Source: Octopus bimaculoides
Lineage: Eukaryota
Direction of reading: 5' to 3'
DNA length: 64,000 nt
Assembly (NCBI RefSeq): GCF_001194135.2
Contig: NC_068983.1
Coordinates: 105,571,610-105,635,609, forward strand
Numbering within the stretch: the first letter of the stretch is position 1; the number at the start of each line of letters is the position of its first letter. The notes below the pieces were generated by a model that saw only the letters and a list, made by a program, of their open reading frames with translations, searched no databases and had not been told where the DNA came from. Positions 21,441-63,579 of the stretch are shown piece by piece. The position numbers were made by a program, and so were the translations under genes.

Positions 21441-21641
21441 ATGCCAACCCCGAAGAGATTACGGGACCTGATAAGGGAGATCCGATCAGCCCGTACTGCT
21501 GCTGATGAACGGGCTGTAGTGAACAAAGAATGTGCCCAAATTAGGGACTCATTTAGAGATGAAGATAACACTTATCGTTGCAGAAATGTGGCTAAATTAT
21601 TATATATACACATGCTTGGCTATCCAGCTCATTTTGGTCAG
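21441..21641 (+). CDS. AP1G1: AP-1 complex subunit gamma-1, exon with the canonical start ([15 protein letters not shown]...YPAHFGQ, 67 aa)
   Basis: Translation is the gamma-adaptin N-terminus. Acceptor AG at 21437-21438, donor CAG|GTAAGT at 21642, phase 0. Confidence 0.97.
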
Positions 21642-22775: not shown

Positions 22776-22997
<222 letters not shown>

Positions 22998-25636: not shown

Positions 25637-25778
25637 TGATCTTACCCATCAGAATCAATATATACAAAGCTTGGCATTGTGTACTTTAGGCTCTGTATGC
25701 TCAACAGAAATGAGCCGAGATTTAGCAGGAGAGGTAGAAAAATTATTAAAGTCTTCAAATGCTTACATAAAGAAAAAG
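25637..25778 (+). CDS. AP1G1: AP-1 gamma exon ([47 protein letters not shown])
   Basis: Acceptor TTTCCAG at 25636, donor AAG|GTAAAT at 25779, 142 nt, phase 2 to 0. Confidence 0.97.
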
Positions 25779-26249: not shown

Positions 26250-28660
26250 CATTATCATCATCATCATTTAACGTCCACTTTACATGCTAGCATGGGTTGG
26301 ATGATTTGACTGGGGACTGGCAAACCAGATGGCTACACCAGACTCCAATCTTATCTGGCAGAGTTTCTACAGCTGGATGCCCTTCCTAACGCCAACCAAT
26401 CTGAGAGTGTAGTGGGTGCTTTTTACGTACCACCAGCACAAGGGCCAGTCTGGCGGTACTGGCAACGGCCACGCTCAAATGGTGTTTTTTTATGTGCCAC
26501 CTGCACAGGAGTCAGTCCAATGTTTTGTTCACATGTCACTGGCACGAGTGCCAGTAAAGCGAAGCTGGAAACGATCGCGCTCAAATGGTGCTTTTTACGT
26601 GTCACTGGCACGGAAGCGAGACTGCTGCTCTGGCAGTGATACTGCTCGGATGGTGCTGTTAGCACTCCGCTGGCACGGGTGCCAGTCATCGAATTTGGTT
26701 CAGTTTCGATCTCACTTACCCCAACAGGTCTTCGCAAGCAGAGTTTAGTGTCCAATGAAGGAAGGTCGGCATGGGTGCCAGTCAACAAATTTGGTTCAAT
26801 TTTCGATTTTGATTTCACTTGCCTCAACAGGTCTTTGCAAGCAAGGTTTTGTGTCCAAAGAAGGAAAGGTACGCATAAGTGGGCTGGCTACACCCCTGCT
26901 AAAGGCCACGGGTTATGGTCTCACTTGTCTTACCGGGTCTTCTCACACACAGCATATTTCCAAAGGTCTCAGTCTAAGTCATTGCCTCGGTGAGGCTTAA
27001 TGTTTGAAAGTTGTGCTTCACCACTTTATCCCAGGTCTTCCTGGGTCTACCTCTTCCACAGGTACCCTCAACTGCAAGGCTGTGGCACTTTTTCACATAG
27101 CTATCCTCATCCATTCAGCGCAATCGTCTCTCTTGCACACCACTTCTGATGCTTCTTAGGTCCAACTTTTCTCTCAAGGTACTTATACTCTGTCGAGTAT
27201 GCACACTGACATTACATTTACATCAGAGCATACTGGCTTCGTTCCTTGTGAGCTTACGCATGTCCTCAGCCCATGTTTCACTGCCATGTAGCATAGCTGT
27301 TCGTTCACATGCATCATACTGTCCACCTTTTACTGTGAGCGAGAGGCCCTTTGTCACCAGCAGAGGTAAGAGCTCTCTGAACTTTGCCCAGGCTATTCTT
27401 ATTCTAGCAGCTACACTTTCAGCGCACCCTCCCCCGCTACTGACTTGGTCAACTAGGTAACGGAAGCTATCAACTAATTCTAGTTTTTCTTCCTGGAATG
27501 TGGCAGAAGTTGTTTTCTGCACATTTACAGTGTTTATAGCTCCTGAACATCTGCTACATACAAAAACTATCTTGCTAGTTAGCCTTCCTTTGATATTGCT
27601 GCACCTCTTATGTGTCCATAGCTTACACTGGGTACATCTTATAGAGTTTCTACCTACACCTTTTCTACAGATCGAGCAGGGCCATCTACCTGAAGGGGTT
27701 TGTGGTTTGTCTACCTTTCTACTTATTAGGACTTTGGTTTTAGCTAGGTTGACTCTAAGGCCCTTCGATTCTAATCCTTGCTTCCACACCTGAAACTTTT
27801 CCTCTAGTTCTGATAGTGACTCAGCAATTAGAGCAAGGTCATCAGCATAGAGGAGCTCCCAGGGGCAACCTGTCTTGAATTCCTGTGTTATTGCTTGGAG
27901 GACTATGATAAATAGGAAGGGGCTGAGGACTGAACCTTGGTGGACCCCTACCTCTACCCGAAACGAGGCTGCAAAGAGAGAGGTTTGGAGACGCTACTAT
28001 GAAAGGTTGCTTAATAAAGAGAATGAGTGGGAGAAAGAGAGTCTACTGAATGTCGACCCAACAGAGGGACCAGCTATCCTAATTGACAGTACCTTGATAG
28101 ATAAAGTGATCAAGAGCATGAAGACAGGGAAAGCGCCTGGCCCACCAGGAATCACTGCAGAGATGCTGAAAATATCTGGCAGTGTTGGCTATAGCCTAGT
28201 CACCCGTATAGTTAACTAGATGATACATGAAGGAGTCATACCCAATGACTGGTGTAGCAGCACCATAGTCAACTACTACAAAGGTAATGGTGACGCTTTA
28301 GACACAAACAATTACAGAGGTATCAAGTTGTTGGACCAGGTAATGAAGGTCACGGAGAGGGTCATAGCCCAACTAATTAGGGAGTGAATCAATTTAGATG
28401 AGATGCAGTTTGGGTTTGTCCCAGGGAAAAGTACCACCGATGCTATATTTCTGGTAAGACAGCTGCAGGAGAAATACCTAGCCAAAGATAAACCTCTGTA
28501 CCTGGCTTTCATTGACATGGAGAAAGCCTTTGACAGGGTCCCCCGATCCCTTATCTGGTGGTCAATGAGGAAACTAGGGATAGATGAATGGTTAGTGAGA
28601 GCTGTGCGAGCCATGTATAGGGACTGTCAGTAAGGTGAGGGTTGGCAACGAGTTCAGTGA
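26250..28660 (-). mobile_element. 5'-truncated RTE-clade LINE with (GAT)n tail, 5' inversion and 8-bp TSD
   Basis: Minus strand 27960 to 26250 encodes FRVEVGVHQGSVLSP...LLYADDL...PHD...SETW, then the 3'UTR and (GAT)n tail. Plus strand 27961-28660 encodes the upstream RT part. TSD ATAATACT at 26242-26249 and 28661-28668. Confidence 0.93.
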
Positions 28661-28860
28661 ATAATACTGTAAATAGAATTATAATCCTTCACTGTATATT
28701 GACTATAGAAAATAATCTAATATTAGGACTTATAATCCCATGTAACAGAAGAAAGAATGGGCATTAGCATGTGTACTAATGCTTATTATTCCCTATTATA
28801 GGGACTTATGTACCCTGATATTAGACTATTTTCTATAATCAATATATGATGAAGGCTTAT

Positions 28861-29437
28861 AGTTTCATTTAATGTCCATTTTCCATGTTGGCATAAGTTG
28901 AATAATTTGACAGGAGCTGGCAAGGACAAGAGCTGGACCAGGTTCCGTAGTCTGTATTAGCTTGGTTTCTACAGCTGGGTGCCCTTCCTAAGAATTACTT
29001 TACAGGGTGTACTGGGTGCTTTTTACATGGCACCAGTGATTTTTACGTCACTCCAGCACCAGTGCTTTTTACATGGCACCGGCACCAGTGCTTTTTATGT
29101 GGAAGAAGTGCTTTTTGTGTGACACCAGCACTAGTGCTTTTTACATGGCACCAGTACTAATGGTGTTAGGGGATGAAATGTGAGTGGGGGAGAATGTTGA
29201 AAGGGCAGATCCCCTCATGGACAAACGTTATCAAGGTGGTTTTAGGATATCAATTCTGTTGTGGTGGGTGCATCTTCTTGAGTACAGCAATGTGTCACAT
29301 ATCTCAGTCCTTTGTCATCTCCTTCATAAGGCTCAATGTTTTGAGATCAGCCTTCAATACTTCACCCCATGTCTTCCCGGGTCTCCCTCTTCCCCAACTT
29401 CCATCCACTTTAAGTGATCATCACTTTTTTATGCAAC
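28861..29437 (-). mobile_element. Older RTE 3' end with short internal tandem repeats
   Basis: RTE-like tail (GTTTCTACAGCTGGGTGCCCTTCCTAA), repeated GTGCTTTTTACATGGCACCAG units at about 28995-29160, and GGTCTCCCTCTTCC (reverse of GRGRP codons). Confidence 0.75.
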
Positions 29438-30780
29438 TCATCATCATCATCATCATCATTGTTTAATGTTTGTTTTCCATGCAGGCATGGGTTGGACGGT
29501 TTGACTGAGGACTGGCACGCCAGGAGGCCGCACCAGGCTCCAATCTGATCTGGCAATATTTCTACAGCTGGATGCTCTTCCTAACGCAAACCACTCTGAG
29601 AGGAGTGTAGTGGGTGCTTTTTACATACCACCGGTACAGGAGCGAGTCAGGCTGCACTGGCATCGGCCATGTTTGGATGGTGCTTTTTACATGCTACCAG
29701 CACAGGGTCTGATTGGAGCGAGGAGGGGGGGAGCTGGCATTGACCCTGTTTGGATGATGCTTTTTACGTGCCACCGGCACAGGGACCCAGTCAGGCGGCA
29801 CTGGCAACGACCTATGTATGAATGGTGTTTATTGCATGCCACCAGCACAGGAGCCAGTCAGGCAGCACTGGCAACGGCCACCACTACAATTCCCATTCTT
29901 GATTGTGATTTGATTTTTGATTTTACTTGACTCAGTAGGTCTCCTCAAGCATGGTATGTTGCCCAATGATTCAAAGGTACTTTTAAATGGGCTGGTTATG
30001 CAACACTGGTATACGGCTGTGATCTCACTTTACTTGCCAGGTCTTCTCAATCACAGCATATCTCCAGAGATCTCGGTCTCTTGTCATTGCCTCTGTGAGG
30101 CTCAACGTTCAAAAGTCATGCTTCACCATCTCATCCCATGTCTTCTTGGGTCTCCCTCTTCCACGAGCTCCTTCCACTGTTAGGGAGTGACACTTCGCAG
30201 CACATGACCATACCAGTGCAGTCGTCTCTTTTGCACACCACATCTGATGCTTCTTATGTCCAACATTTCTCTCAGGATGCTTACACTCTGTTGTGTGTGC
30301 ACACTGACATTACACATCCAGTGGATCATATCAGCTTAATTTCTTTCAAGCCTACACATGTCTTCAGCATTCACTGCTCATGTTTCACTGCTGTGTAGCA
30401 TGGCAATTCGCATACATGCATCATACAGTCTACCTTTCACTCTGATCGAGAGGCCCTTTGTCACCAGTAGAGGTAGGAGCTTTCTGAACTTTGGCCAGGT
30501 TATTCTTATTCTAGTGGCAACACTCTTTGAGCATCCACCCCCACTATAGACTTGGTCACCTATGTAGCAGAAGCTATCAGCTACTTCTAGTTTCTCCCCC
30601 TGGCATGTGATGTAATCCGTTTTCTGAGCATCCACAGTGTTTATTGCCCCTGTGCATCTGCTTCACACAAAAGCTATCATCCCAGTTAACCTTCCTTTGA
30701 TGTTGCTGCACCTCTTATGTGTCCATAGCTTACACTGGGTACATCTTATGGAGTTTCTACCCACACCTTTTCTACAGATC
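29438..30780 (-). mobile_element. Second 5'-truncated RTE copy of the same family as 26250-28660
   Basis: (CAT)n tail at 29438-29459, 3'UTR repeats, and ORF MDAQKTDYITCQGEKLEVADSFCYIG...LHSSET. It is truncated inside the PHD-finger segment. Confidence 0.9.
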
Positions 30781-31054: not shown

Positions 31055-31151
31055 GCTACTCTGTGTGCTTTTCGCATAATCAGAAAAGTACCAGATCTTA
31101 TGGAAATGTTCATTCCAGCAACTAGGTCTTTGCTCAATGAAAAAAACCATG
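31055..31151 (+). CDS. AP1G1: AP-1 gamma exon ([33 protein letters not shown])
   Basis: Acceptor TTTTTACAG at 31054, donor ATG|GTAAGT at 31152, 97 nt, phase 0 to 1. Confidence 0.97.
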
Positions 31152-33990: not shown

Positions 33991-36310
33991 TACCTATAAT
34001 ATATGTTCCTTAGTATAAATGCTAATGTAATTGTCTGTTAAAATAATTCTTTAAAATTACTCCAGTTCTTGTCAAATGATATAGAAAGTAAATCTTATTA
34101 AGTGAAACAGTCAACAGCTTCAAATGCTAAAGTGTTACTCACAAAAAGAAGTATATTTACAAAGATCAACTAAAATATCTTCTAATTTCTCTGAAATTTC
34201 AGATATTTCAACTGATATAATTTCTTTTTATTCTAATATCAAAATATCCATGCTAATCTTGATTAATTGCTCTTAATTAACTTAGGTTTCAACAAAATTC
34301 TATCATATAATTTTGCCTCAACTTTCATTCTTGCTTGTTTAATTCTATCTAAATTTACAAATTCTTTTAAGTAATTTAAGCTACTTTGTTATACAAATAT
34401 TTCCTATGTATCATCTTTACTTTTGTTCTTGAAGAAAATTTTAAAGCCATATTGATTTTTTTTTTCCCCTTATTGAATTGACTAAGACTTAAATAATGAA
34501 TGTTTACCCATACCAAAAACTGAATACTGGTTCAGTATCAATGATATTAATTCATGATAGGCTTAATGAATAAGCACATTGCCATCACCCCACCCAAACG
34601 GATTGCTGTGAGTGAGTGATTCACTTTGTAACAGTTACTGGACTGTGCAGAGCTGGTTAGAACTCCTGTTAAATTAGGAAAACATTTGCTTTACATAATA
34701 TAACCATTGTATGGTAGCAAATAATTACCAAAAATAAAAGTTATTAGTTTTTAATATAGCTTTGTAAAATTCGGGCAGATTGCCACAAGTACAACTGTCA
34801 CTTCCTGATTTTCCAAAACCTGCTGATAAAAGACATAAAAAAAGGATTACTAACATCATGTGTGCCTTCAGTTGCTTTGTGGAAAGATAAAACAAGACTA
34901 ATTGAATCTATTCTTTAAAAAATAGTGTTTTCCTTTCTGATAAACATTACACATTAGAATTTCCTTTCAACATTTGCCTTTTGATTTATTATTTGAAGTC
35001 ATTTATTTATAAAGCTGCTCTCAGTGCTAGTTTAAGCTTGGCTTAACAGCAGGAAAGAATTACTTCGTAGTTACTGTATCAAAATGGTGCAAGTTGCTAC
35101 ATTAAAGCAAACATTGAACTTTACAGTTATGATGATTGCTAATTTATGTGTAATATTATTCTTAATAAAAGATAATAGGTTCTCTTATAACAATTTGCTG
35201 TTGGATTATAGTTAATCTGTTGCAGAGCTGATAATATTTGTAGAGCTAACTACCTGAGTTTGAACTAATTTTATTACAGAATTTTTTTATTTTTTTTTTC
35301 TTTTGAAAATTAGTATTCTACATATTTTTAAAAGAATTAGCTTTTATAAATGATAAGCTTACTTATTAATCAAAGAATCTAAACATTGGATCAGATTGTC
35401 ATACAAAATAATCTGAATTATTCAACTCAAATGTGATGTCATAGTGATGTCCTTAATTTCTAAATAATTTGGCAATTAGATTTCTTTATGATTGCATATT
35501 GAGTATTTTAAATATTTAAAAATGTAAAGTAAACAATATAATCCTTTGTTTTTGCCCGTTTGTCACCTAAATTATACTATTCACAGGTGAAAATGTTTTG
35601 AAAACATTTCAAATATTTTGAAAAGTATATTTCTTTAAAAGAATATTTTTATTAAGTGCCTAGATATAACAGAATCATTGCTGTTATCATACAAAAATGG
35701 TTTTGTTTTAGTTATAATTAAATCATATTTAGTAGATAGCTAAGTGTAGGGAAATGGAGTGACAGTAATGATAGTGCCAGACTAAATTTTTTTGTGTGTC
35801 TAGTTGTATTCACATTATCATTTTGAGGTCAACAAAATAAGTACCAGTTGAGTATTTAAGGCAATTCTATTAACTACACCCTTTACCAAAATGCACATTT
35901 TTGTACTAAAGTTAGAAATCAATAAGGAATAGAAGACTTCTTAGACAATCACTGAGTTCATTAATGTTGTCATAGCAAAGCAGTTACATACTTCAATGGC
36001 CATCATAAATTTCATTTTTACATAAGCTAAATTCTTTTTACTATGTATAAACAGCAGTCTTGCAGATTTTGAAAGAAAAGTACTCAATCAAGAACATTAA
36101 CCATTTGAAACAGGGGCTGTGTTATTCAATTATTATTAAACCATTTGTAAAAAGGAAAGGCAACTGGAACAAAATAAGTTGCTTTTTAAATAAGTTGTTA
36201 ATTTTTCCTTGTATACTTGTTTATTGAAGAAAAAAAACAGTCCGTTTGTGCCTTGGCTAAATGAAACATTAGCCAATTTTTGAAATGGCACGTATGCTTT
36301 CTTTTTCCAG

Positions 36311-36391
36311 GATTGCCAGGTCATCCAGGTGAAGGATATATCCCATGCAACAGACATGCTGGGCGATGGGCTAGGACTGTGTCTCCAAACG
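36311..36391 (+). CDS. Candidate alternative cassette exon of AP1G1 (18-nt or 81-nt form)
   Basis: Acceptor TGCTTTCTTTTTCCAG, GC-rich island, open in the required phase 1. Frame-preserving donors occur after 18 nt (CAG|GTGAAG) and 81 nt (ACG|GCATGT, a GC donor). No transcript evidence. Confidence 0.4.
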
Positions 36392-39300
36392 GCATGTGCT
36401 ACACATGTGTTTTGTCTGTAGAAGCCTTAGTGTCTGCACTCCAACTACTACTATTCTTAACATCCCTGCATTAGAATATGATCATATCTAGTGTATTTTA
36501 GAAACACATTTCCTGCTGCACCTTTTATCCATTTAGATTATTATTGTGGATTGTAAACATTTTCTTCTTCATAATGTTCCAAAATGCTTCACTGCTATCT
36601 AAAGTACACTCTATACATTCACTATCACCTTTTTCAGTCAAAGTTTCAGGCAACAGATAGGCTTATTGCCAATCATCTTCAGTTTTAGCAATCTCTAGAT
36701 TTATTTTAAGTATAAGTGTGTCATCTACTCTGGTATTTAAATGAAAGGTAACAGTAAAGTAACATTGCTAGTTTTTGAACTCAAAACACTGAGAATCTGT
36801 TTTGTTAAATATTTTCTTAAATCTGTTACTCAGCCAATGACTTGCACTGATCTTTGATATCTGATTTTTTAGTTAAAGATCAGTAAAATGTCTTATTGAA
36901 GGTAAAAATTTGCAAACCTTGTGCAATAAGTTTCACATTATGTTGAATAGTTATAAAGTAATGAAAGTTTTCTGGTTGGAAATTTGTTGTAAAGAGGGTT
37001 ATAAAGAAAAGTTTTTTTCATTAAGAACAATTATTTTTTAAATTCTTTTACTGAGATGTTAAAATTTTATGACTAGTTTGTATGTGAAATGTTCAAAATA
37101 TACTGATAGAATTGGTGTAAAAATTTAGTCTTTTATTTCTATGAATAAAACACTTCTATTAAATAGCAAATGGATTCAGTATGAAATGATTTTATCTGTA
37201 GGATTCTAGTTAGTGAGGGAAGCATTAATAAAGATATGATAGAACAAATGTGTTGGCCAACTTAATATTCATTGAAATATTTGAATTTTATGTTTTAGTA
37301 TCATATAGATTTAGGCAAGAAGCATTATAATCAACTAGAAGCTCTATGAACTAAAAATTTTGTATAAGCATTTATGTTTAGTGTCTTATCTACTTAGCTA
37401 TTCATTCATTCATGATGCTGATGATGAAAGAGATAAGAACTAAGGCTTTAGCCAGAGTGAAGTTTTAACAGCTTAGATAAAACCCCTGAGGATGGTTAAT
37501 TCCAGAAAATGTTTTTCCATTACTAATAGGTGAGAAATTTAGGATGTAAATGGGATTTGTTCAGACTATGAAAGAAAATGAGACAACAGTTCACCTTCTG
37601 TAGTCTAGATGTAAAATATTTACTAAAAATGAGTATTTTAAGAGATGGTATAACAATTTATTGACAGCTTTAGCAATAACTTCACCAAAACAAAAAGGAT
37701 TAGTGGTATAAAGTCAGAGAAACTGTACTAGAGAATAAGGAAAAGAAACTGTATTTGTAGTGTTAGACTACATGTGTAAGTCTACCATTGAGAGATTTCA
37801 GGTTTGATTTTAGAAAATAAGCACCAAAAGTTGATCTGTCTCAGTGGGTAAAACAAGAGCAATTGAAAACATCCCAACTGCTAGTCTTTGAAATGTATGA
37901 AAGGAGAATGTGATATAATATTAAGATTTGAGGAATGACTGAAGTTCAAAGATATGAGAGAAAGTCTATTAAAAAAAGAAAGCATTTGAGGAAGTATGTA
38001 TGCAAAATGCCAGTGAATTGTGTGAAGTGAAACAATATTTAGAAAAGTAGTTTGGAGTTTTTCAGACTGAACTTATAATATGTTTGATGTCTTCTAGCTC
38101 AATCTTAGGCTATTACTAGAAATAATGATAATTATTTCTTATATACATCAATGTTTCCTGATTATGAAGAGGAGAATTGGAAGATCGTGGTATATATGCC
38201 CTTCTACAAACATTCCCTTTTAAAAGTTTCAAATGAGAAATCAAATTTATGTTGCAGTGCAAATTATCAATATCCATAATAACTTATATTCATCTTTATT
38301 TGACTAGCTGTAAAGCCCATTTTGGGAATGATTGTATAGTTAATTGAAATTCTTCTTTATGGTAATGGTATTTATTTCATGGGCCCAGTAGAAGGAAGAC
38401 TTAGCTCTAGCAACACAATTTTCAGATAGTGTAAAGGCAATAATTCTAATTGACTTCAGTCTAACAATGTAATTAATGAACATGAGTGTTTAGATTCATA
38501 TATTTTTGTATGTATGTAACAGTTCGCCTTTGGAAATATTGCCTATTTTGAAAGTATGGCATGTTTTAAGCAACAAGAATAAATAACACAACTCATTTCC
38601 TTTTGAATTAATATTTACAGCTTTATATTTCATTTAATCTGAAGAATTTATTCCTCGTATATAATTTCACAGTTTTGAAGCTTTTACTGGGTCTTAAAAA
38701 TCTGTGATTAATTTGAATGGAAGAACCAATTTAATCACAATTTATAAATAAGGGATTTATTTTTGGCATGTAGTGTACATAGTGTACTTCTCACTGGTTT
38801 AAGTGTGCTGTTCAGTGATATAGATATCAAGTATTCAACATAGAGTGCATGGTTAATTACCCTATCATTTACTGTGAAATTACTTCACTTAGATGAGCAA
38901 AAACATAGAAATGATTCTGTGGATAAGTAACAAAATTTCAAAAGATAGAATAAATGGAAAAGGGAGATTAAATTAGAATGGTATATAACAAATAAGGAAG
39001 AAAATACCCAAAAATAATATTAATAGGTTTAGAGATGGTAAACTAGATAAAAAAAGTTTTCTGAATACAGTATTACAAGTAAATTAGAAATAGCTACTGA
39101 TTGATCCCAAAGATAAAAATACATCTGTAAGTAGCTAAGAGAAGATAAAGTAGATGATTAGTGCTAAAGAAAAAGCTAGCTCAATAGCTTAAGAGCATTG
39201 ACATAAAAAAAATTTCTAAATGCAACAAAAGATGTAGATGAGAATTAAATCCAAAGAGAATGCTTCATGCAGGATAATCCATTTAATATAATGAAATCAT

Positions 39301-43796: not shown

Positions 43797-43873
43797 GTGT
43801 GTTATTGACAGCTGTCTGCCTAATCACAGAAATGTGTGAAAAGAGTCCAGACACACTGCTTCATTTTAGAAAG
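43797..43873 (+). CDS. AP1G1: AP-1 gamma exon (G-VLLTAVCLITEMCEKSPDTLLHFRK)
   Basis: Acceptor TTTCAG at 43796, donor AAG|GTAAGT at 43874, 77 nt, phase 1 to 0. Not in the ORF track. Confidence 0.96.
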
Positions 43874-45664
43874 GTAAGTGCTGTTGATATACTTAAATAC
43901 TTCCCCTCCCCCATAGTTTTGAGGTAAGTCTTAAATATGTCCATTTATTTCATACCCTATACTCTGTTTTAGGAGGGAAATGCTCTCTCTCTCTCTCTCT
44001 CCTTATATATATATAGATGTTACAGCAAATATATTTGGCATAACAACAGAGTTTGCTCAATTATGTTAATAGAAATACAAAATATTCAAAATTAGTCTGT
44101 TTTCACAACAGTATTGAACTTCCAGTGATGTACTGTGTTTAAAGATTTTCAGACCTGAGAATTGGGCCTTAAATTTGTGTCAGCAGGGACTTAGAATGAA
44201 TGACTTATCATTTATCACCCTATTCCTAATAATAGGGTGATAAAAGAAATGGTATTTCTTTTTTGACAGGATTTTTTATTTAAAATGTGTGTACCTGTTT
44301 TATAATGTAATTTGTTATAGTGCATTTGCTGTAGTGTTTCGTTTATTAATGTTACAATACTTTTCTGTTTACTGTTATTTACCTGTTGCTTCTAATTAAT
44401 ATACTAATAATGTTCAAGTAGAAAATTTTAAAAATAAATACAGAAGTACAAAGGCTTTTCTGTACAGGAAAAAAAATAGTTACTGAGCAAATTCAAGAGA
44501 TGATCAACATTTGCCAAAATACGTGGTTACTTACGATACAAAATGTCCACATCAACGTCACATACAGAGGCCTCAGTACTCTTGCTTAAAATGTTATAAA
44601 TAGAATGAAGTACCAAATACATTACAGTTTATTTTGGTTTAACCATTTCTACATGTACCCATATAGTAAATGTCAATTTCTGACATGATGATTTCAGTTG
44701 CTATCTTTATGAAATTACAATAGACAGAATTCAACAACAAACATGAACTGGGAATTAAATTTATACTAAATGGTATCAAACGTGTATGTTACATTTTAAA
44801 AGATGAATAGTATGTCAAAATCACTGTTTAAGGACCAGCAGTGCTGATTCAAAATACCATATAGATTTACTTTTAGATGCTTGAATATGCATTTTAATAA
44901 GCATTGATTATATTATCCGTGTTGGATAACAATTATAACTTATTCTCATCTCTAGTTTATTGTGGAATTGCTCATGTATGCCATTCTAAAGTTATTCAGT
45001 AGAGATTTAATATACCTACATTGATCTTCATTAGTTTATTACCTTCAAATTTATTTGTTGAAATATTAACCCTCTTTTTAAGCTTGCCTAGATTTCTCTT
45101 ATTTGTAATCTTAATTGTGTGTGTGTTACAGTTTTTTTGTTTGACCACATTTAACAGCATGTCTTTGCATTGGTTACAATTGAAATATTTATTAGAAAGC
45201 CTGTTAATATTACATTTTTTAAAATAAAGTTTTCCCTATGAATGAATATTATAAAAACAAAATTAAAAGTTTTGAATATTGATTTAAACTTTTGATATAC
45301 AAATGTTCAGCAGTAACTTCAACATTAGCACAAAATTAACATTACATTTTATACATAAGCAAATCCATAACTACTAACTGCTGTTTAAATTGGTAGGAAC
45401 TCACCTGTGTCGACAGTCTATTAATCACCTGCTTTACTAGTAAATATAGACTAGCTAGTCTTGCTCTTTTGTGATATATATATATAAGTTGTATTGATTT
45501 CATTGCCACTTTTAAATAGACAGTATCAACTGGGTGGTTCTGTTTACTCCTTCCATCTTTATTGCATTCTATCATTACAGGTTAAAATTTTCCCATAACA
45601 GTGTATATTTTCTGTATTTGCTGTATCATATTCAAATAATTCTGGTCATTAATGTCCCTATTAA

Positions 45665-47765: not shown

Positions 47766-48445
47766 TTAGTGTGATCTCAAATTTGGCTTCAATATACCAA
47801 TGTTTGGAATTAACTAAAATCAACTCTTACAAGTATCCTGGTACTACAATGGTTTTTTTTATCCTCTCACCTCCTTTTGTTTTAAAATTACATGATTATT
47901 TTTGTAGATGTTTTTAAATTTCAACATTATCATTCACCATTAATTTCAGTTGCAATTTTTAAAAATCTCTTCTGTTTGATCCAACTGAAATCTCAAGTTA
48001 GCTATGGATATTGCTTTTAACAAACAACTCAAACATCATTCCTTACAATTATACAATTTGCTTTGTGCAGATCTATCAACTTGTTTATCATTTCACATTG
48101 TAAGATATAAACAGGTTTTTCTAATTTTTATTTTCGGTGTGTTTTAAAGTTGCTTAAATGTTTTGACTCCCCTCTTTTTATGTTATACTCTTTAAAAGCA
48201 CATACTGCTGGGTTGACAATGAATTTTCTAATACAGAACTTCAAACAAATGGGGGTTTTTTTCTTTTAGAAGGAAGGAGATTTTTTTCACATTAAATTGT
48301 ATCATTTCTTTTTTTTTTTTTTTTTTATTAAATATAAAGTGGCTTTATTTGACCTATTTCTTATTGACTTAACTGATTTTATGTTTGACATCTTTTNNNN
48401 NNNNNNAACTGATTTTATGTTTGACATCTTTTGTGTATTCTGCAG

Positions 48446-48457
48446 GATGATTTGGAG
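48446..48457 (+). CDS. Candidate 12-nt microexon of AP1G1 (DDLE)
   Basis: TTTTGTGTATTCTGCAG|GATGATTTGGAG|GTAGGA, phase 0-0, in the intron directly after HFRK, where vertebrate AP1G1 has its 9-nt NEK microexon. Confidence 0.5.
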
Positions 48458-53637: not shown

Positions 53638-54650
53638 ATCATCATCATCATCATCATCGTTTAACGTCCGCCTTCCATGCTAGCATGGGTTGGACGATTT
53701 GACTGAGGACTGGTGAAACCGGATGGCAACACCAGGCTCCAATCTAATTTGGCAGAGTTTCTACAGCTGGATGCCCTTCCTAACGCCAACCACTCAGAGA
53801 GTGTAGTGGGTNNNNNNNNNNNNNNNNNNNNNNNNNNNNNNNNNNNNNNNNNNNNNNNNNNNNNNNNNNNNNNNNNNNNNNNNNNNNNNNNNNNNNNNNN
53901 NNNNNNNNNNNNNNNNNNNNNNNNNNNNNNNNNNNNNNNNNNNNNNNNNNNNNNNNNNNNNNNNNNNNNNNNNNNNNNNNNNNNNNNNNNNNNNNNNNNN
54001 NNNNNNNNNNNNNNNNNNNNNNNNNNNNNNNNNNNNNNNNNNNNNNNNNNNNNNNNNNNNNNNNNNNNNNNNNNNNNNNNNNNNNNNNNNNNNNNNNNNN
54101 NNNNNNNNNNNNNNNNNNNNNNNNNNNNNNNNNNNNNNNNNNNNNNNNNNNNNNNNNNNNNNNNNNNNNNNNNNNNNNNNNNNNNNNNNNNNNNNNNNNN
54201 NNNNNNNNNNNNNNNNNNNNNNNNNNNNNNNNNNNNNNNNNNNNNNNNNNNNNNNNNNNNNNNNNNNNNNNNNNNNNNNNNNNNNNNNNNNNNNNNNNNN
54301 NNNNNNNNNNNNNNNNNNNNNNNCCGCACATGAGCCAGTCCAGGGGCACCGGCAACGATCCCGCTTGAAAAACCTCATGTGTCACCCGCACAAGAGCCGG
54401 CCTAGGGGCGTCGCCCGCACATGAGCCAGTCCAGGGGTACTGGCAACAAACCCGCTCAAACATTTCATGTATCACCCGCACAAGAGTCAGTCCAGGGGCA
54501 CCGACAACGATCTCGCTCGAAAGATATCATGTGTCGCCCGCACATGAGCCAGTCCAGGGGCTCTGGCACGAACCCGCTCGAAAGATTTCATGTGTTGCCC
54601 GCACATGAGCCAGTCCAGGAGCACTGGCAACGATCCTGCTCGAAAGATTC
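53638..54650 (-). mobile_element. RTE 3' end with an expanded minisatellite of about 62 bp (partly in a 512-N gap)
   Basis: (CAT)n tail and tail sequence nearly identical to 26250-26415. Units starting CCGCACA occur at 54324, 54386, 54415 (short unit), 54476, 54538 and 54599. Confidence 0.85.
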
Positions 54651-63254: not shown

Positions 63255-63579
63255 ATNNNNNNNNNNNNNNNNNNNNNNNNNNNNNNNNNNNNNNNNNNNN
63301 NNNNNNNNNNNNNNNNNNNNNNNNNNNNNNNNNNNNNNNNNNNNNNNNNNNNNNNNNNNNNNNNNNNNNNNNTATGTTACTTATTTTTAGTAGTTCTTCG
63401 ACTTATTTAGTCCCTCGATAGCGTGAGGCATCGATGCACAGTTAATGCCCTTTATATATTATTAAATATATCCATGAAGAAAGGATGAATTTTTTCATTA
63501 CGAAATTTTTCGTTATTTTTTCATTGAGGTTTTTTCACGCTGACTACTTGATAAATTCTTATAAAGAATTTATCCTATA

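What the first reader, a model, noticed from the sequence alone, without database searches (positions are those of the whole stretch)
36311..36420. GC-rich island with a strong acceptor and nested in-frame donors: unannotated cassette exon candidate
Seen: an island of roughly 50% GC in a repeat-poor AT-rich intron stretch (about 34-40 kb), starting exactly at TTTCTTTTTCCAG. It is open in the phase required by the flanking exons. Donors after 9 nt (GTCATC, weak), 18 nt (CAG|GTGAAG) and 81 nt (GC donor GCATGT) all preserve frame. They would insert GLP, GLPGHP or GLPGHPGEGYIPCNRHAGRWARTVSPN between NEKNH and GVLL. Other donors would make it a poison exon. It also contains the palindrome GGATATATCC and the stem CATGTG/CACATG. 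I know of no insertion at this position in other gamma adaptins, so a real exon would be a lineage-specific isoform.
Basis: partly seen in the sequence, partly recalled or inferred. Interest (0 to 1): 0.7.

Follow-up and report, generated by a model that had tools for sequence, protein, structure and literature searches.

The report
Unproven microexon-like site in AP1G1 intron
A short GC-rich patch in a long intron of a cephalopod gamma-adaptin (AP1G1) gene carries very strong splice-like signals that could add 3 or 6 amino acids, but cuttlefish transcripts lack such an insert, so it is most likely an unused or lineage-specific cryptic exon.

Summary
The gene is AP-1 gamma-adaptin. Exon 31055-31151 ends NEKNH in phase 1 and exon 43797-43873 starts GVLL. 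The patch 36311-36420 is 50% GC in a roughly 29% GC intron. It starts at tttctttttccag|G, and donors after 9 and 18 nt keep the frame.

By a rough scoring matrix the acceptor is the best of all 7,487 AGs in the window. The +18 donor CAG|GTGAAG ranks in the top 5 of 659 GTs in the intron. The nested donors are not independent evidence, though: they come from CCAGG repeated three times at a 9-nt period.

There is no Rfam, tRNA or Pfam match, no fold signal and no second copy in the window. All six distinct cuttlefish AP1G1 proteins (about 70 transcript contigs on record, 22 read) join NEKNH directly to GVLL. The first 10 kb of the Sepia intron has no counterpart. Transcripts of the window's own species could not be reached.

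My verdict is a cryptic, unconserved pseudo-microexon (about 0.55). A real lineage-specific 18-nt microexon remains possible (about 0.25).

By-product: a genuine conserved 12-nt microexon lies at 48446-48457 (DDLE; DDYE in cuttlefish). It sits at the junction where vertebrate AP1G1 records differ by NEK.

The parts
31055..31151 (+). Upstream constitutive AP1G1 exon (ATLCAFRII...LLNEKNH + first base of a Gly codon; ends in phase 1, donor ATG|gtaagt)
   Evidence: aligns to Sepia pharaonis exon at 87% and to cuttlefish transcripts
36253..36276 (+). Small hairpin TTGGCTAA-ATGAAACA-TTAGCCAA, 34-57 nt upstream of the acceptor. It covers the only CTAA-type branch-point-like motif and the nearest upstream AG (at -40).
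   Evidence: read from sequence; sliding-window fold z about -3 for 36230-36310, not significant after 90 windows
36295..36297 (+). TGC (UGC) motif at -16..-14 from the acceptor, directly upstream of the pyrimidine tract
   Evidence: UGC close to the 3' splice site is part of the eMIC/SRRM4 microexon code (PMC8797185). A single UGC is expected by chance in roughly 1 of 6 such stretches (my estimate).
36298..36310 (+). Acceptor: 11-nt pyrimidine tract TTTCTTTTTCC followed by AG
   Evidence: score 10.05, best of 698 AGs in the intron (next 5.81) and of 7,487 AGs on both strands of the window; the real acceptors of the gene score 1.4-7.0
36311..36328 (+). Candidate 18-nt microexon GATTGCCAGGTCATCCAG. 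It would insert GLPGHP between H188 and G189. The 9-nt sub-variant 36311-36319 would insert GLP.
   Evidence: translation; donor after 18 nt, CAG|GTGAAG, scores 5.26, top 5 of 659 GT in the intron; donor after 9 nt, CAG|GTCATC, scores 0.34, weak
36307..36329 (+). CCAGG-ATTG-CCAGG-TCAT-CCAGG: three CCAGG at a 9-nt period. Each CCAG|G(T) is both acceptor-like and donor-like. In frame it reads PGLPGHPG (Gly-X-Pro).
   Evidence: unique in the window, 0 of 100 shuffles; TRF does not call it
36310..36400 (+). GC-rich core (50-57% GC), inside a milder GC rise from about 36238 to 36520. The AP1G1 frame stays open to the TAG at 36472-36474.
43797..43873 (+). Downstream constitutive exon (GVLLTAVCLITEMCEKSPDTLLHFRK; ends in phase 0)

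Best explanation
The site is a cryptic pseudo-microexon. It is a unique GC-rich patch in the 12.6-kb intron between the NEKNH and GVLL exons of a cephalopod AP1G1 gene. An 11-nt pyrimidine tract abuts three CCAGG motifs spaced 9 nt apart.

Each CCAG|G(T) can act as a 3' or a 5' splice site, and the period is a multiple of three. The arrangement therefore produces an excellent acceptor (36310|36311) followed by frame-preserving donors at +9 and +18.

The segment is only 18 nt, too short for ordinary exon definition, so I infer that it is normally skipped. If the acceptor is used at a low level, the +18 donor restores the frame and adds GLPGHP, which makes leakage harmless. That harmlessness would explain why such a strong decoy can persist.

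It is not part of the conserved cephalopod AP1G1 isoform set. The conserved alternative microexon of this gene lies in the next intron, at 48446-48457.

Shown: the sequence anatomy, the ranking of the sites, the repeat, the absence of an insert from cuttlefish transcripts, and the absence of ncRNA, protein-family or repeat matches. Inferred: that it is skipped in the window's own species.
For: - Cuttlefish transcripts: six distinct AP1G1 proteins on about 70 Logan transcript contigs, 22 of them read at nucleotide level. All read AACCATG|GAGTATTATTGAC, that is NEKNH|GVLL with no insert.
- The same data set recovers the real 12-nt microexon DDYE in 5 contigs, so alternative microexons of this gene are detectable there.
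- No counterpart of the patch, and no comparable acceptor, in the first 10 kb of the orthologous Sepia pharaonis intron. Only exons align between the two genomes.
- The nested in-frame donors are explained by the 9-nt CCAGG periodicity.
- Decoys of this kind occur. My scan at relaxed thresholds gives 8 acceptor-donor pairs on the + strand, 6 of them frame-breaking. The Sepia intron holds an in-frame 33-nt decoy.
- The validated microexon at 48446 has AT-rich flanks, so the GC island is not a microexon hallmark in this genome.
- The 64-residue open frame has no real relatives among 1.84 billion representatives. The only hits are repeat proteins whose scores sum over many stretches. There is no Pfam hit.
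Against: - The acceptor is the best in the whole window and better than every real acceptor of the gene. The +18 donor matches the donor of the validated microexon (5.26 against 5.19).
- A rough joint chance estimate (mine) is a few per thousand that the top acceptor lies in a sense intron and is followed within 60 nt by an in-frame, stop-free, top-1% donor. The repeat couples these events, so the true figure is higher.
- Of the two frame-preserving hits of my scan, the other one (48446) turned out to be real.
- A UGC sits at -16..-14, as in eMIC-dependent microexons.
- A 55% GC stretch in a 29% GC intron must be either young or constrained.
- Transcripts of the window's own lineage were not examined. 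The negative transcript evidence comes from cuttlefish, which are only 86-88% identical in coding sequence.
Confidence: 0.55

Rival explanations
1. It is a genuine, lineage-specific alternative microexon of AP1G1: 18 nt giving GLPGHP, possibly also 9 nt giving GLP or GHP. It would probably be neural and depend on the eMIC domain of Srrm234. It would lengthen the tight turn between two helices of the gamma-adaptin trunk.
For: - Best acceptor in the window and a good donor 18 nt downstream.
- Frame and open reading preserved.
- UGC at -16..-14, a long pyrimidine tract and a 40-nt AG-free zone, which fit the published cis code (PMC8797185).
- AP1G1 is a proven microexon host. Vertebrate records differ by NEK at the next junction, and ap1g1 is among the conserved neural microexon genes deleted in zebrafish. 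Cephalopods have DDYE/DDLE at that same junction.
- The insertion site is at the start of a helix, right after a 3-residue turn, in a confident AF2 model of a close homologue. A Gly/Pro-rich insert is plausible there.
Against: - Absent from all cuttlefish transcripts and proteins retrieved.
- No counterpart in the available part of the Sepia intron.
- No insert at this junction in about 300 gamma-adaptins from other animals.
- The in-frame donors are a by-product of a 9-nt repeat.
- The GC-rich 70 nt downstream of the donor is unexplained and unlike the flanks of the validated microexon.
Confidence: 0.25
2. It is a longer cassette, poison or alternative terminal exon that starts at 36311. Options are the 81-nt GC donor, the 96-nt CAT|GTGTTT donor, out-of-frame weak donors that would lead to nonsense-mediated decay, or read-through to the stop at 36472-36474 with polyadenylation further downstream.
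For: - The GC rise starts exactly at the acceptor and lasts about 90 nt, an exon-like length.
- The AP1G1 frame stays open for 54 codons.
- AATAAA signals lie at 37144 and 37227.
Against: - Every donor beyond +18 scores below -3 in my matrix, and the GC donor ACG|GCATGT is far from the consensus GC donors need.
- The 27-54 residue peptide has no relatives.
- It would put a large Cys/Trp/Arg-rich loop into a conserved solenoid turn, or truncate the protein at residue 189.
- No such isoform exists in cuttlefish.
Confidence: 0.08
3. It is an intronic element that acts on splicing or transcription without ever being part of the mRNA. One option is a recursive splice site: CCAG|GTGAAG at 36328|36329 would regenerate a donor (ATG|GTGAAG) after the first splicing step and leave no trace in the mRNA. 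Others are a decoy exon or an enhancer.
For: - AG|GT juxtapositions at 36319|36320 and 36328|36329 lie downstream of a strong pyrimidine tract, near the middle of a 12.6-kb intron.
- The GC island is unusual for the intron.
- Normal NEKNH|GVLL mRNA is what recursive splicing would yield.
Against: - The first AG after the tract (36310) is followed by GA, not GT, so the strongest acceptor does not regenerate a donor.
- The acceptors at 36320 and 36329 score only 2.1-2.6.
- No conservation is shown.
- As far as I know, recursive splicing has not been described in cephalopods.
Confidence: 0.07
4. It is a fragment of a repeat, retrocopy or small RNA gene that happens to look like an exon.
For: - A roughly 280-nt block of raised GC (36238-36520) is SINE-sized.
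- Retroelement debris exists elsewhere in the gene, for example the RT-like ORF at 27223-27789.
Against: - No second copy in the 64-kb window, in 60 kb of Sepia DNA or in three other invertebrate loci.
- No tRNA and no Rfam match, even at E up to 10.
- No fold signal and no Pfam match in the ORFs of six frames.
- No poly(A) tail or target-site duplication seen.
Confidence: 0.05

Closest known systems
Neural microexons (3-27 nt) dependent on the eMIC domain of SRRM4/Srrm234
   Same: - Length of 18 nt (or 9 nt), frame-preserving.
- Long pyrimidine tract, a UGC just upstream of it, an AG-free zone and a decent donor.
- The host gene is a vesicle-trafficking adaptor.
- The encoded residues would sit at a turn between helices.
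   Different: - No evidence of inclusion.
- No conservation in cuttlefish.
- The acceptor is very strong, whereas published eMIC targets tend to have weak 3' splice-site regions (PMC8797185).
- The downstream flank is GC-rich, unlike the validated microexon in the same window.
The AP1G1 microexon at the HFRK|LVPQL junction (NEK in vertebrate records; DDYE/DDLE in cephalopods, window 48446-48457)
   Same: Same gene, adjacent intron, same size class, frame-preserving, comparable donor score.
   Different: - That one is seen in transcripts (5 cuttlefish contigs) and is conserved: 10 of 12 nt between cuttlefish and the window.
- The candidate at 36311 is one junction upstream and has neither property.
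Pseudoexons / cryptic exons of long introns
   Same: Consensus-like acceptor and donor at exon-like spacing deep in a long intron, with no sign of use in available transcripts and no conservation.
   Different: The acceptor is exceptional (rank 1 in 64 kb on both strands). The segment is far shorter than typical pseudoexons and keeps the frame.
Recursive splice sites (ratchet points) and RS-exons
   Same: Pyrimidine tract followed by CAG|GT motifs in the middle of a long intron.
   Different: The AG next to the tract is followed by GA. The AG|GT junctions are 9 and 18 nt further on and have poor acceptor context.

Membership tests
Alternatively spliced cassette microexon | Functional-looking 3' splice site (pyrimidine tract + AG) | tested here: met
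   Score 10.05, rank 1 of 7,487 AGs in the window. Real acceptors of the gene score 1.4-7.0 and the validated microexon 4.55. The matrix is a rough one written from memory.
Alternatively spliced cassette microexon | Functional-looking 5' splice site 3-27 nt downstream | tested here: met
   CAG|GTGAAG after 18 nt scores 5.26 (top 5 of 659 in the intron). CAG|GTCATC after 9 nt scores 0.34, which is weak.
Alternatively spliced cassette microexon | Reading frame preserved, no stop codon | tested here: met
   Translation gives ...NEKNH-GLPGHP-GVLL.... The frame preservation follows from the 9-nt CCAGG period.
Alternatively spliced cassette microexon | Inclusion in mature transcripts | tested here: not met
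   Tested only in cuttlefish. Six distinct proteins on about 70 Logan contigs, 22 read: none has an insert at NEKNH|GVLL. Not testable for the window's own species with these tools.
Alternatively spliced cassette microexon | Conservation of the exon and its flanks in related species | tested here: inconclusive
   No match in the first 10 kb of the orthologous Sepia pharaonis intron. The rest of that intron and closer relatives were not available.
eMIC/SRRM4-dependent microexon | UGC motif close to the 3' splice site, long pyrimidine tract, AG exclusion zone | tested here: met
   UGC at -16..-14, 11-nt tract, nearest upstream AG at -40; criteria taken from PMC8797185. This is weak evidence, because a single UGC is common by chance.
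Known RNA family (Rfam) or tRNA | Match to a covariance model or a tRNA fold | tested here: not met
   No match at gathering thresholds in the window. Nothing overlapping the patch at E up to 10. No tRNA. Fold z-scores +0.5 and +1.0.
Interspersed repeat | Multiple copies in the genome | tested here: inconclusive
   No second copy in the window or in the fetched loci. The species' genome was not available.
Recursive splice site | Strong acceptor immediately followed by GT, so that a donor is regenerated | tested here: not met
   36310|36311 is AG|GA. The AG|GT sites at 36319|20 and 36328|29 have acceptor scores of only 2.1 and 2.6.
Collagen-like coding sequence | Extended Gly-X-Y repeats | tested here: not met
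   Only three triplets (GLP GHP GEG) before the periodicity ends. No Pfam collagen hit.

The most novel reading that the evidence does not exclude
The 18-nt segment 36311-36328 is a real, lineage-specific, probably neural microexon that inserts GLPGHP into an inter-helix turn of the gamma-adaptin trunk. It would have arisen recently from a 9-nt tandem triplication next to a pyrimidine tract. AP1G1 would then carry two microexons at consecutive junctions in this cephalopod: an ancient one (DDLE, 48446-48457) and a newborn one.
Probability: 0.25. Interest if true: 0.45.

Novelty: not a real feature. Interest (0 to 1): 0.25.

Why it matters
If the site is only a cryptic exon, it has no biological weight. 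It would still be a clean example of a 9-nt micro-duplication creating a perfect-looking, frame-safe decoy.

If it is included in the window's species, it would be a newly born microexon in a core clathrin-adaptor subunit. It would sit next to an old conserved microexon and be useful for studying how microexons originate.

The by-product matters more. Cephalopod AP1G1 has a 12-nt microexon (DDYE/DDLE) at the same exon junction where vertebrate AP1G1 records differ by NEK. That means either an ancient bilaterian microexon position or a striking convergence, and it can be tested directly.

Tried and rejected
Protein searches
- Junction peptide with the 27-residue insert and the 220-residue N-terminus with GLPGHP. 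The hit lists held only proteins up to about 1.75 times the query length, so full-length proteins were not seen. No hit carried the insert.
- Chimeric 589-residue query. It was dominated by the vertebrate-like part that I had added, so vertebrates filled the list. This was a planning error on my part. It still yielded P0254, the cuttlefish full-length protein that opened the transcript route.
- Exhaustive search of the island ORF against 1.84 billion representatives. The only hits were internally repetitive proteins whose scores add up over many stretches. I rejected them as spurious.

Exact look-ups of window ORFs in the assembly collection
- None is on record, so neither the species nor its reads could be identified. 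Two of the four ORFs start with TTG or GTG and may have failed only for that reason.

Other dead ends
- The Sepia pharaonis gene-model tail GEWRSFNLFFLLKN looked like an alternative exon after NEKNH. It is intron read-through and is absent from the window.
- Loci L002-L004 (ENA assemblies) are not close relatives: exon identity is 72-81%.
A close homologue was modelled instead.
- Structural arguments do not discriminate. The validated NEK/DDYE site lies inside a predicted helix.
- The supplement of the bioRxiv paper that includes Octopus bimaculoides splicing data is not held.
- ncRNA, miRNA hairpin, snoRNA, tRNA-derived SINE and collagen fragment were each considered and rejected.
Full report
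**1. What is there**

The window carries the 5' part of an AP-1 gamma-adaptin (AP1G1) gene on the + strand.
- 21441-21641 (holds the ATG)
- 22806-22930
- 25637-25778
- 31055-31151
- 43797-43873

All five have canonical AG/GT borders. Spliced together they give 214 residues that match solved AP-1 gamma-1 chains at E = 2e-109. Exon 31055-31151 ends ...LLNEKNH plus one base (phase 1). Exon 43797-43873 starts GT GTG TTA, so the junction reads NEKNH-G-VLL. The intron between them is 12.6 kb and about 29% GC.

**2.

At 36298-36310 the sequence reads TTTCTTTTTCCAG, followed by GATTGCCAG|GTCATCCAG|GTGAAGG.

GC is 0.50 over 36311-36420. Only 0.4% of 110-nt windows in this intron reach that. At 30-nt resolution the rise begins at the acceptor and lasts to about 36400 at 50-57%, inside a milder rise from about 36238 to 36520.

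The palindrome and the small stem exist but mean nothing. The window holds 307 perfect 10-nt palindromes. The region folds no better than shuffled sequence (z = +0.5 and +1.0). The best of 90 sliding windows has z = -3.3 and lies upstream of the patch.

**3. How unusual are the splice signals?**

I scored sites with a position weight matrix written from memory of metazoan consensus frequencies. It is rough, and I use it only for ranking.
- The acceptor at 36311 scores 10.05. The next best AG in the intron scores 5.81, the four real acceptors 1.4-7.0, and no other AG among 7,487 on both strands reaches 9.
- The donor after 18 nt (CAG|GTGAAG) scores 5.26, in the top 5 of 659 GTs in the intron.
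- The donor after 9 nt (CAG|GTCATC) scores 0.34, which is weak.
- Every GT further downstream scores below -3, and the GC donor ACG|GCATGT is far from consensus.

So only the 18-nt version, and marginally the 9-nt one, is credible.

Pairs with acceptor at least 8 and donor at least 5.26 within 60 nt occur once on each strand of the window. At relaxed thresholds there are 8 pairs on the + strand, 6 of them frame-breaking and 5 inside retroelement debris at 26-31 kb. Decoys of this type therefore exist at a rate that makes one in-frame decoy per window unsurprising.

**4. The nested donors are not independent evidence**

The stretch 36307-36329 is CCAGG-ATTG-CCAGG-TCAT-CCAGG, that is CCAGG three times at a 9-nt period. 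This is unique in the window and never seen in 100 shuffles.

Each CCAG|G(T) is both acceptor-like and donor-like. Because 9 is a multiple of 3, frame preservation is automatic. The same periodicity makes the peptide read Gly-X-Pro (PGLPGHPGEG). Only three triplets follow this pattern, and no collagen or other Pfam family matches.

**4b. What it is not**

- No Rfam family at gathering thresholds in the window, and nothing over the patch at E up to 10.
- No tRNA.
- No second copy in the window.
- No plausible minus-strand exon.
- The 64-residue open frame has no true relatives among 1.84 billion representative proteins. The six hits are internally repetitive proteins whose scores sum over up to 16 stretches.

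**5. Comparative and transcript evidence**

A Sepia (Acanthosepion) pharaonis contig carrying the first four coding exons was retrieved as L001. Only the exons align with the window, at about 87%, so the window comes from a different coleoid lineage. The 10 kb of Sepia intron downstream of the NEKNH exon has no match to the patch and no comparable acceptor. It does hold a 33-nt in-frame decoy. The odd tail of the Sepia gene model is intron read-through.

Among the hits, P0254 (819 residues, from Logan assemblies of RNA-seq runs) is 99.5% identical to the window's 214 residues. Its cluster holds five full-length transcript-derived proteins on about 70 contigs, plus the second half of the Sepia pharaonis annotation.

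I read 22 transcript contigs. They are 96-100% identical to the Sepia pharaonis exons and 86-88% identical to the window. All 22 join AACCATG|GAGTATTATTGAC, that is NEKNH|GVLL without an insert. All six protein sequences agree.

**6. A positive control appeared**

One cluster member, P0313 (823 residues, 5 contigs), carries DDYE (GATGATTATGAG) between HFRK and LVPQL. My scan had already flagged ctgcag|GATGATTTGGAG|gtagga at 48446-48457, in the intron after exon 43797-43873. It is in frame (DDLE), with a UGC right before the AG.

The cuttlefish 16-mer (AG + exon + GT) matches the window once, at that spot, with 2 mismatches. Chance expects 0.04 such matches.

Vertebrate AP1G1 records differ by NEK at exactly this junction. 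ap1g1 is one of the conserved neural microexon hosts deleted in zebrafish (PMC12626424 and PMC12626420). That the zebrafish microexon is this NEK exon is my inference.

The control shows three things:
- Alternative microexons of this gene do get into the transcript data.
- The real one is conserved between the window's lineage and cuttlefish.
- Its flanks are AT-rich, so the GC island at 36311 is not what a microexon looks like in this genome.

**7. Structure**

An AF2 model of the close homologue P0064 (mean pLDDT 86.7) puts the NEKNH|G junction at the first turn of a helix, right after a three-residue turn. A Gly/Pro-rich 3-6 residue insert is conceivable there. The validated NEK/DDYE site lies inside a predicted helix, so structure does not discriminate between the hypotheses.

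**8. Weighing**

For a real exon:
- exceptional acceptor and good donor
- frame kept
- UGC at -16..-14 and a 40-nt AG-free zone, as in the published eMIC code
- the host gene is a proven microexon carrier
- the other in-frame hit of my scan proved real

Against:
- no insert in any cuttlefish transcript, although the neighbouring microexon is captured
- no counterpart in the available Sepia intron
- no insert at this junction in about 300 gamma-adaptins, apart from read-throughs and a few automatic bird and fish models
- the donors are explained by a micro-repeat
- the GC-rich downstream flank is unexplained
- 18 nt is too short for ordinary exon definition

My estimates are:
- 0.55 for an unused or barely used cryptic exon
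- 0.25 for a real lineage-specific microexon
- 0.08 for a longer, poison or terminal exon
- 0.07 for a non-mRNA splicing or regulatory element such as a recursive site
- 0.05 for a repeat or retrocopy fragment

The decisive test is junction reads from the species itself, with 48446-48457 as the control. I could not run it.

**9. Novelty and interest**

As it stands the finding is a well-observed but unproven exon candidate, and its interest is low (0.25). If it proved real it would be a new member of a known kind, a lineage-specific microexon.

Noticed in passing
window 48446-48457 (+), intron after exon 43797-43873: A 12-nt microexon, ctgcag|GATGATTTGGAG|gtagga, in frame (HFRK-DDLE-...), with UGC directly before the AG. 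Cuttlefish AP1G1 transcripts (P0313, L015, L016) carry GATGATTATGAG (DDYE) between HFRK and LVPQL. The match in the window is unique (0.04 expected). Vertebrate AP1G1 records differ by NEK at the same junction. This is either an ancient microexon position or convergence.
   Followed up: partly
window 43917-43923 (+): A 7-nt segment with strong sites on both sides, cccctcccccatag|TTTTGAG|gtaagtct, 44 nt downstream of the donor of exon 43797-43873. It is frame-breaking. It may be a decoy or an alternative-donor arrangement.
   Followed up: no
window about 26800-30700, e.g. 27223-27789 (-): A GC-rich stretch (43-50% GC) in the intron before exon 31055. It holds a reverse-transcriptase-like 188-residue ORF and a repeated gagaggccctttgtcaccag motif (27341 and 30448). 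This is retroelement debris, and it produces several splice-like decoys.
   Followed up: partly
L001 50171-50213 (Sepia pharaonis CAHIKZ030003581.1); proteins P0065 and P0310: The public Sepia pharaonis AP1G1 annotation is split. P0065 ends ...NEKNHGEWRSFNLFFLLKN by reading into the intron. P0310 (399 residues) holds a later part of the protein with an internal gap.
   Followed up: yes
proteins P0257, P0268, P0270, P0300 (birds); P0223, P0228, P0235, P0236, P0246 (cyprinids); P0200, P0210: Automatic vertebrate models show variants at the NEKNH|GVLH junction. Bird models replace the GVLHTSV... exon by an unrelated short exon. Cyprinid models read GE-ILHTS. Cavia porcellus and an unnamed record read GNVSSHTS. 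These are probably annotation noise or minor isoforms.
   Followed up: no
window 36253-36276 (+): A perfect 8-bp hairpin, TTGGCTAA/TTAGCCAA, with an 8-nt loop, 34-57 nt upstream of the candidate acceptor. It encloses the only CTAA-type branch-point-like motif and the nearest upstream AG. The fold z-score for the surrounding 70-100 nt is about -3.
   Followed up: partly
window 15713, 45718, 48397, 53812-54323, 58316, 60838, 63257-63372: Seven runs of N (10 to 512 bases), so this is a scaffolded draft assembly. One 10-N gap (48397-48406) lies 40 nt upstream of the validated 12-nt microexon and is flanked by a duplicated aactgattttatgtttgacatctttt, probably an assembly artefact.
   Followed up: no
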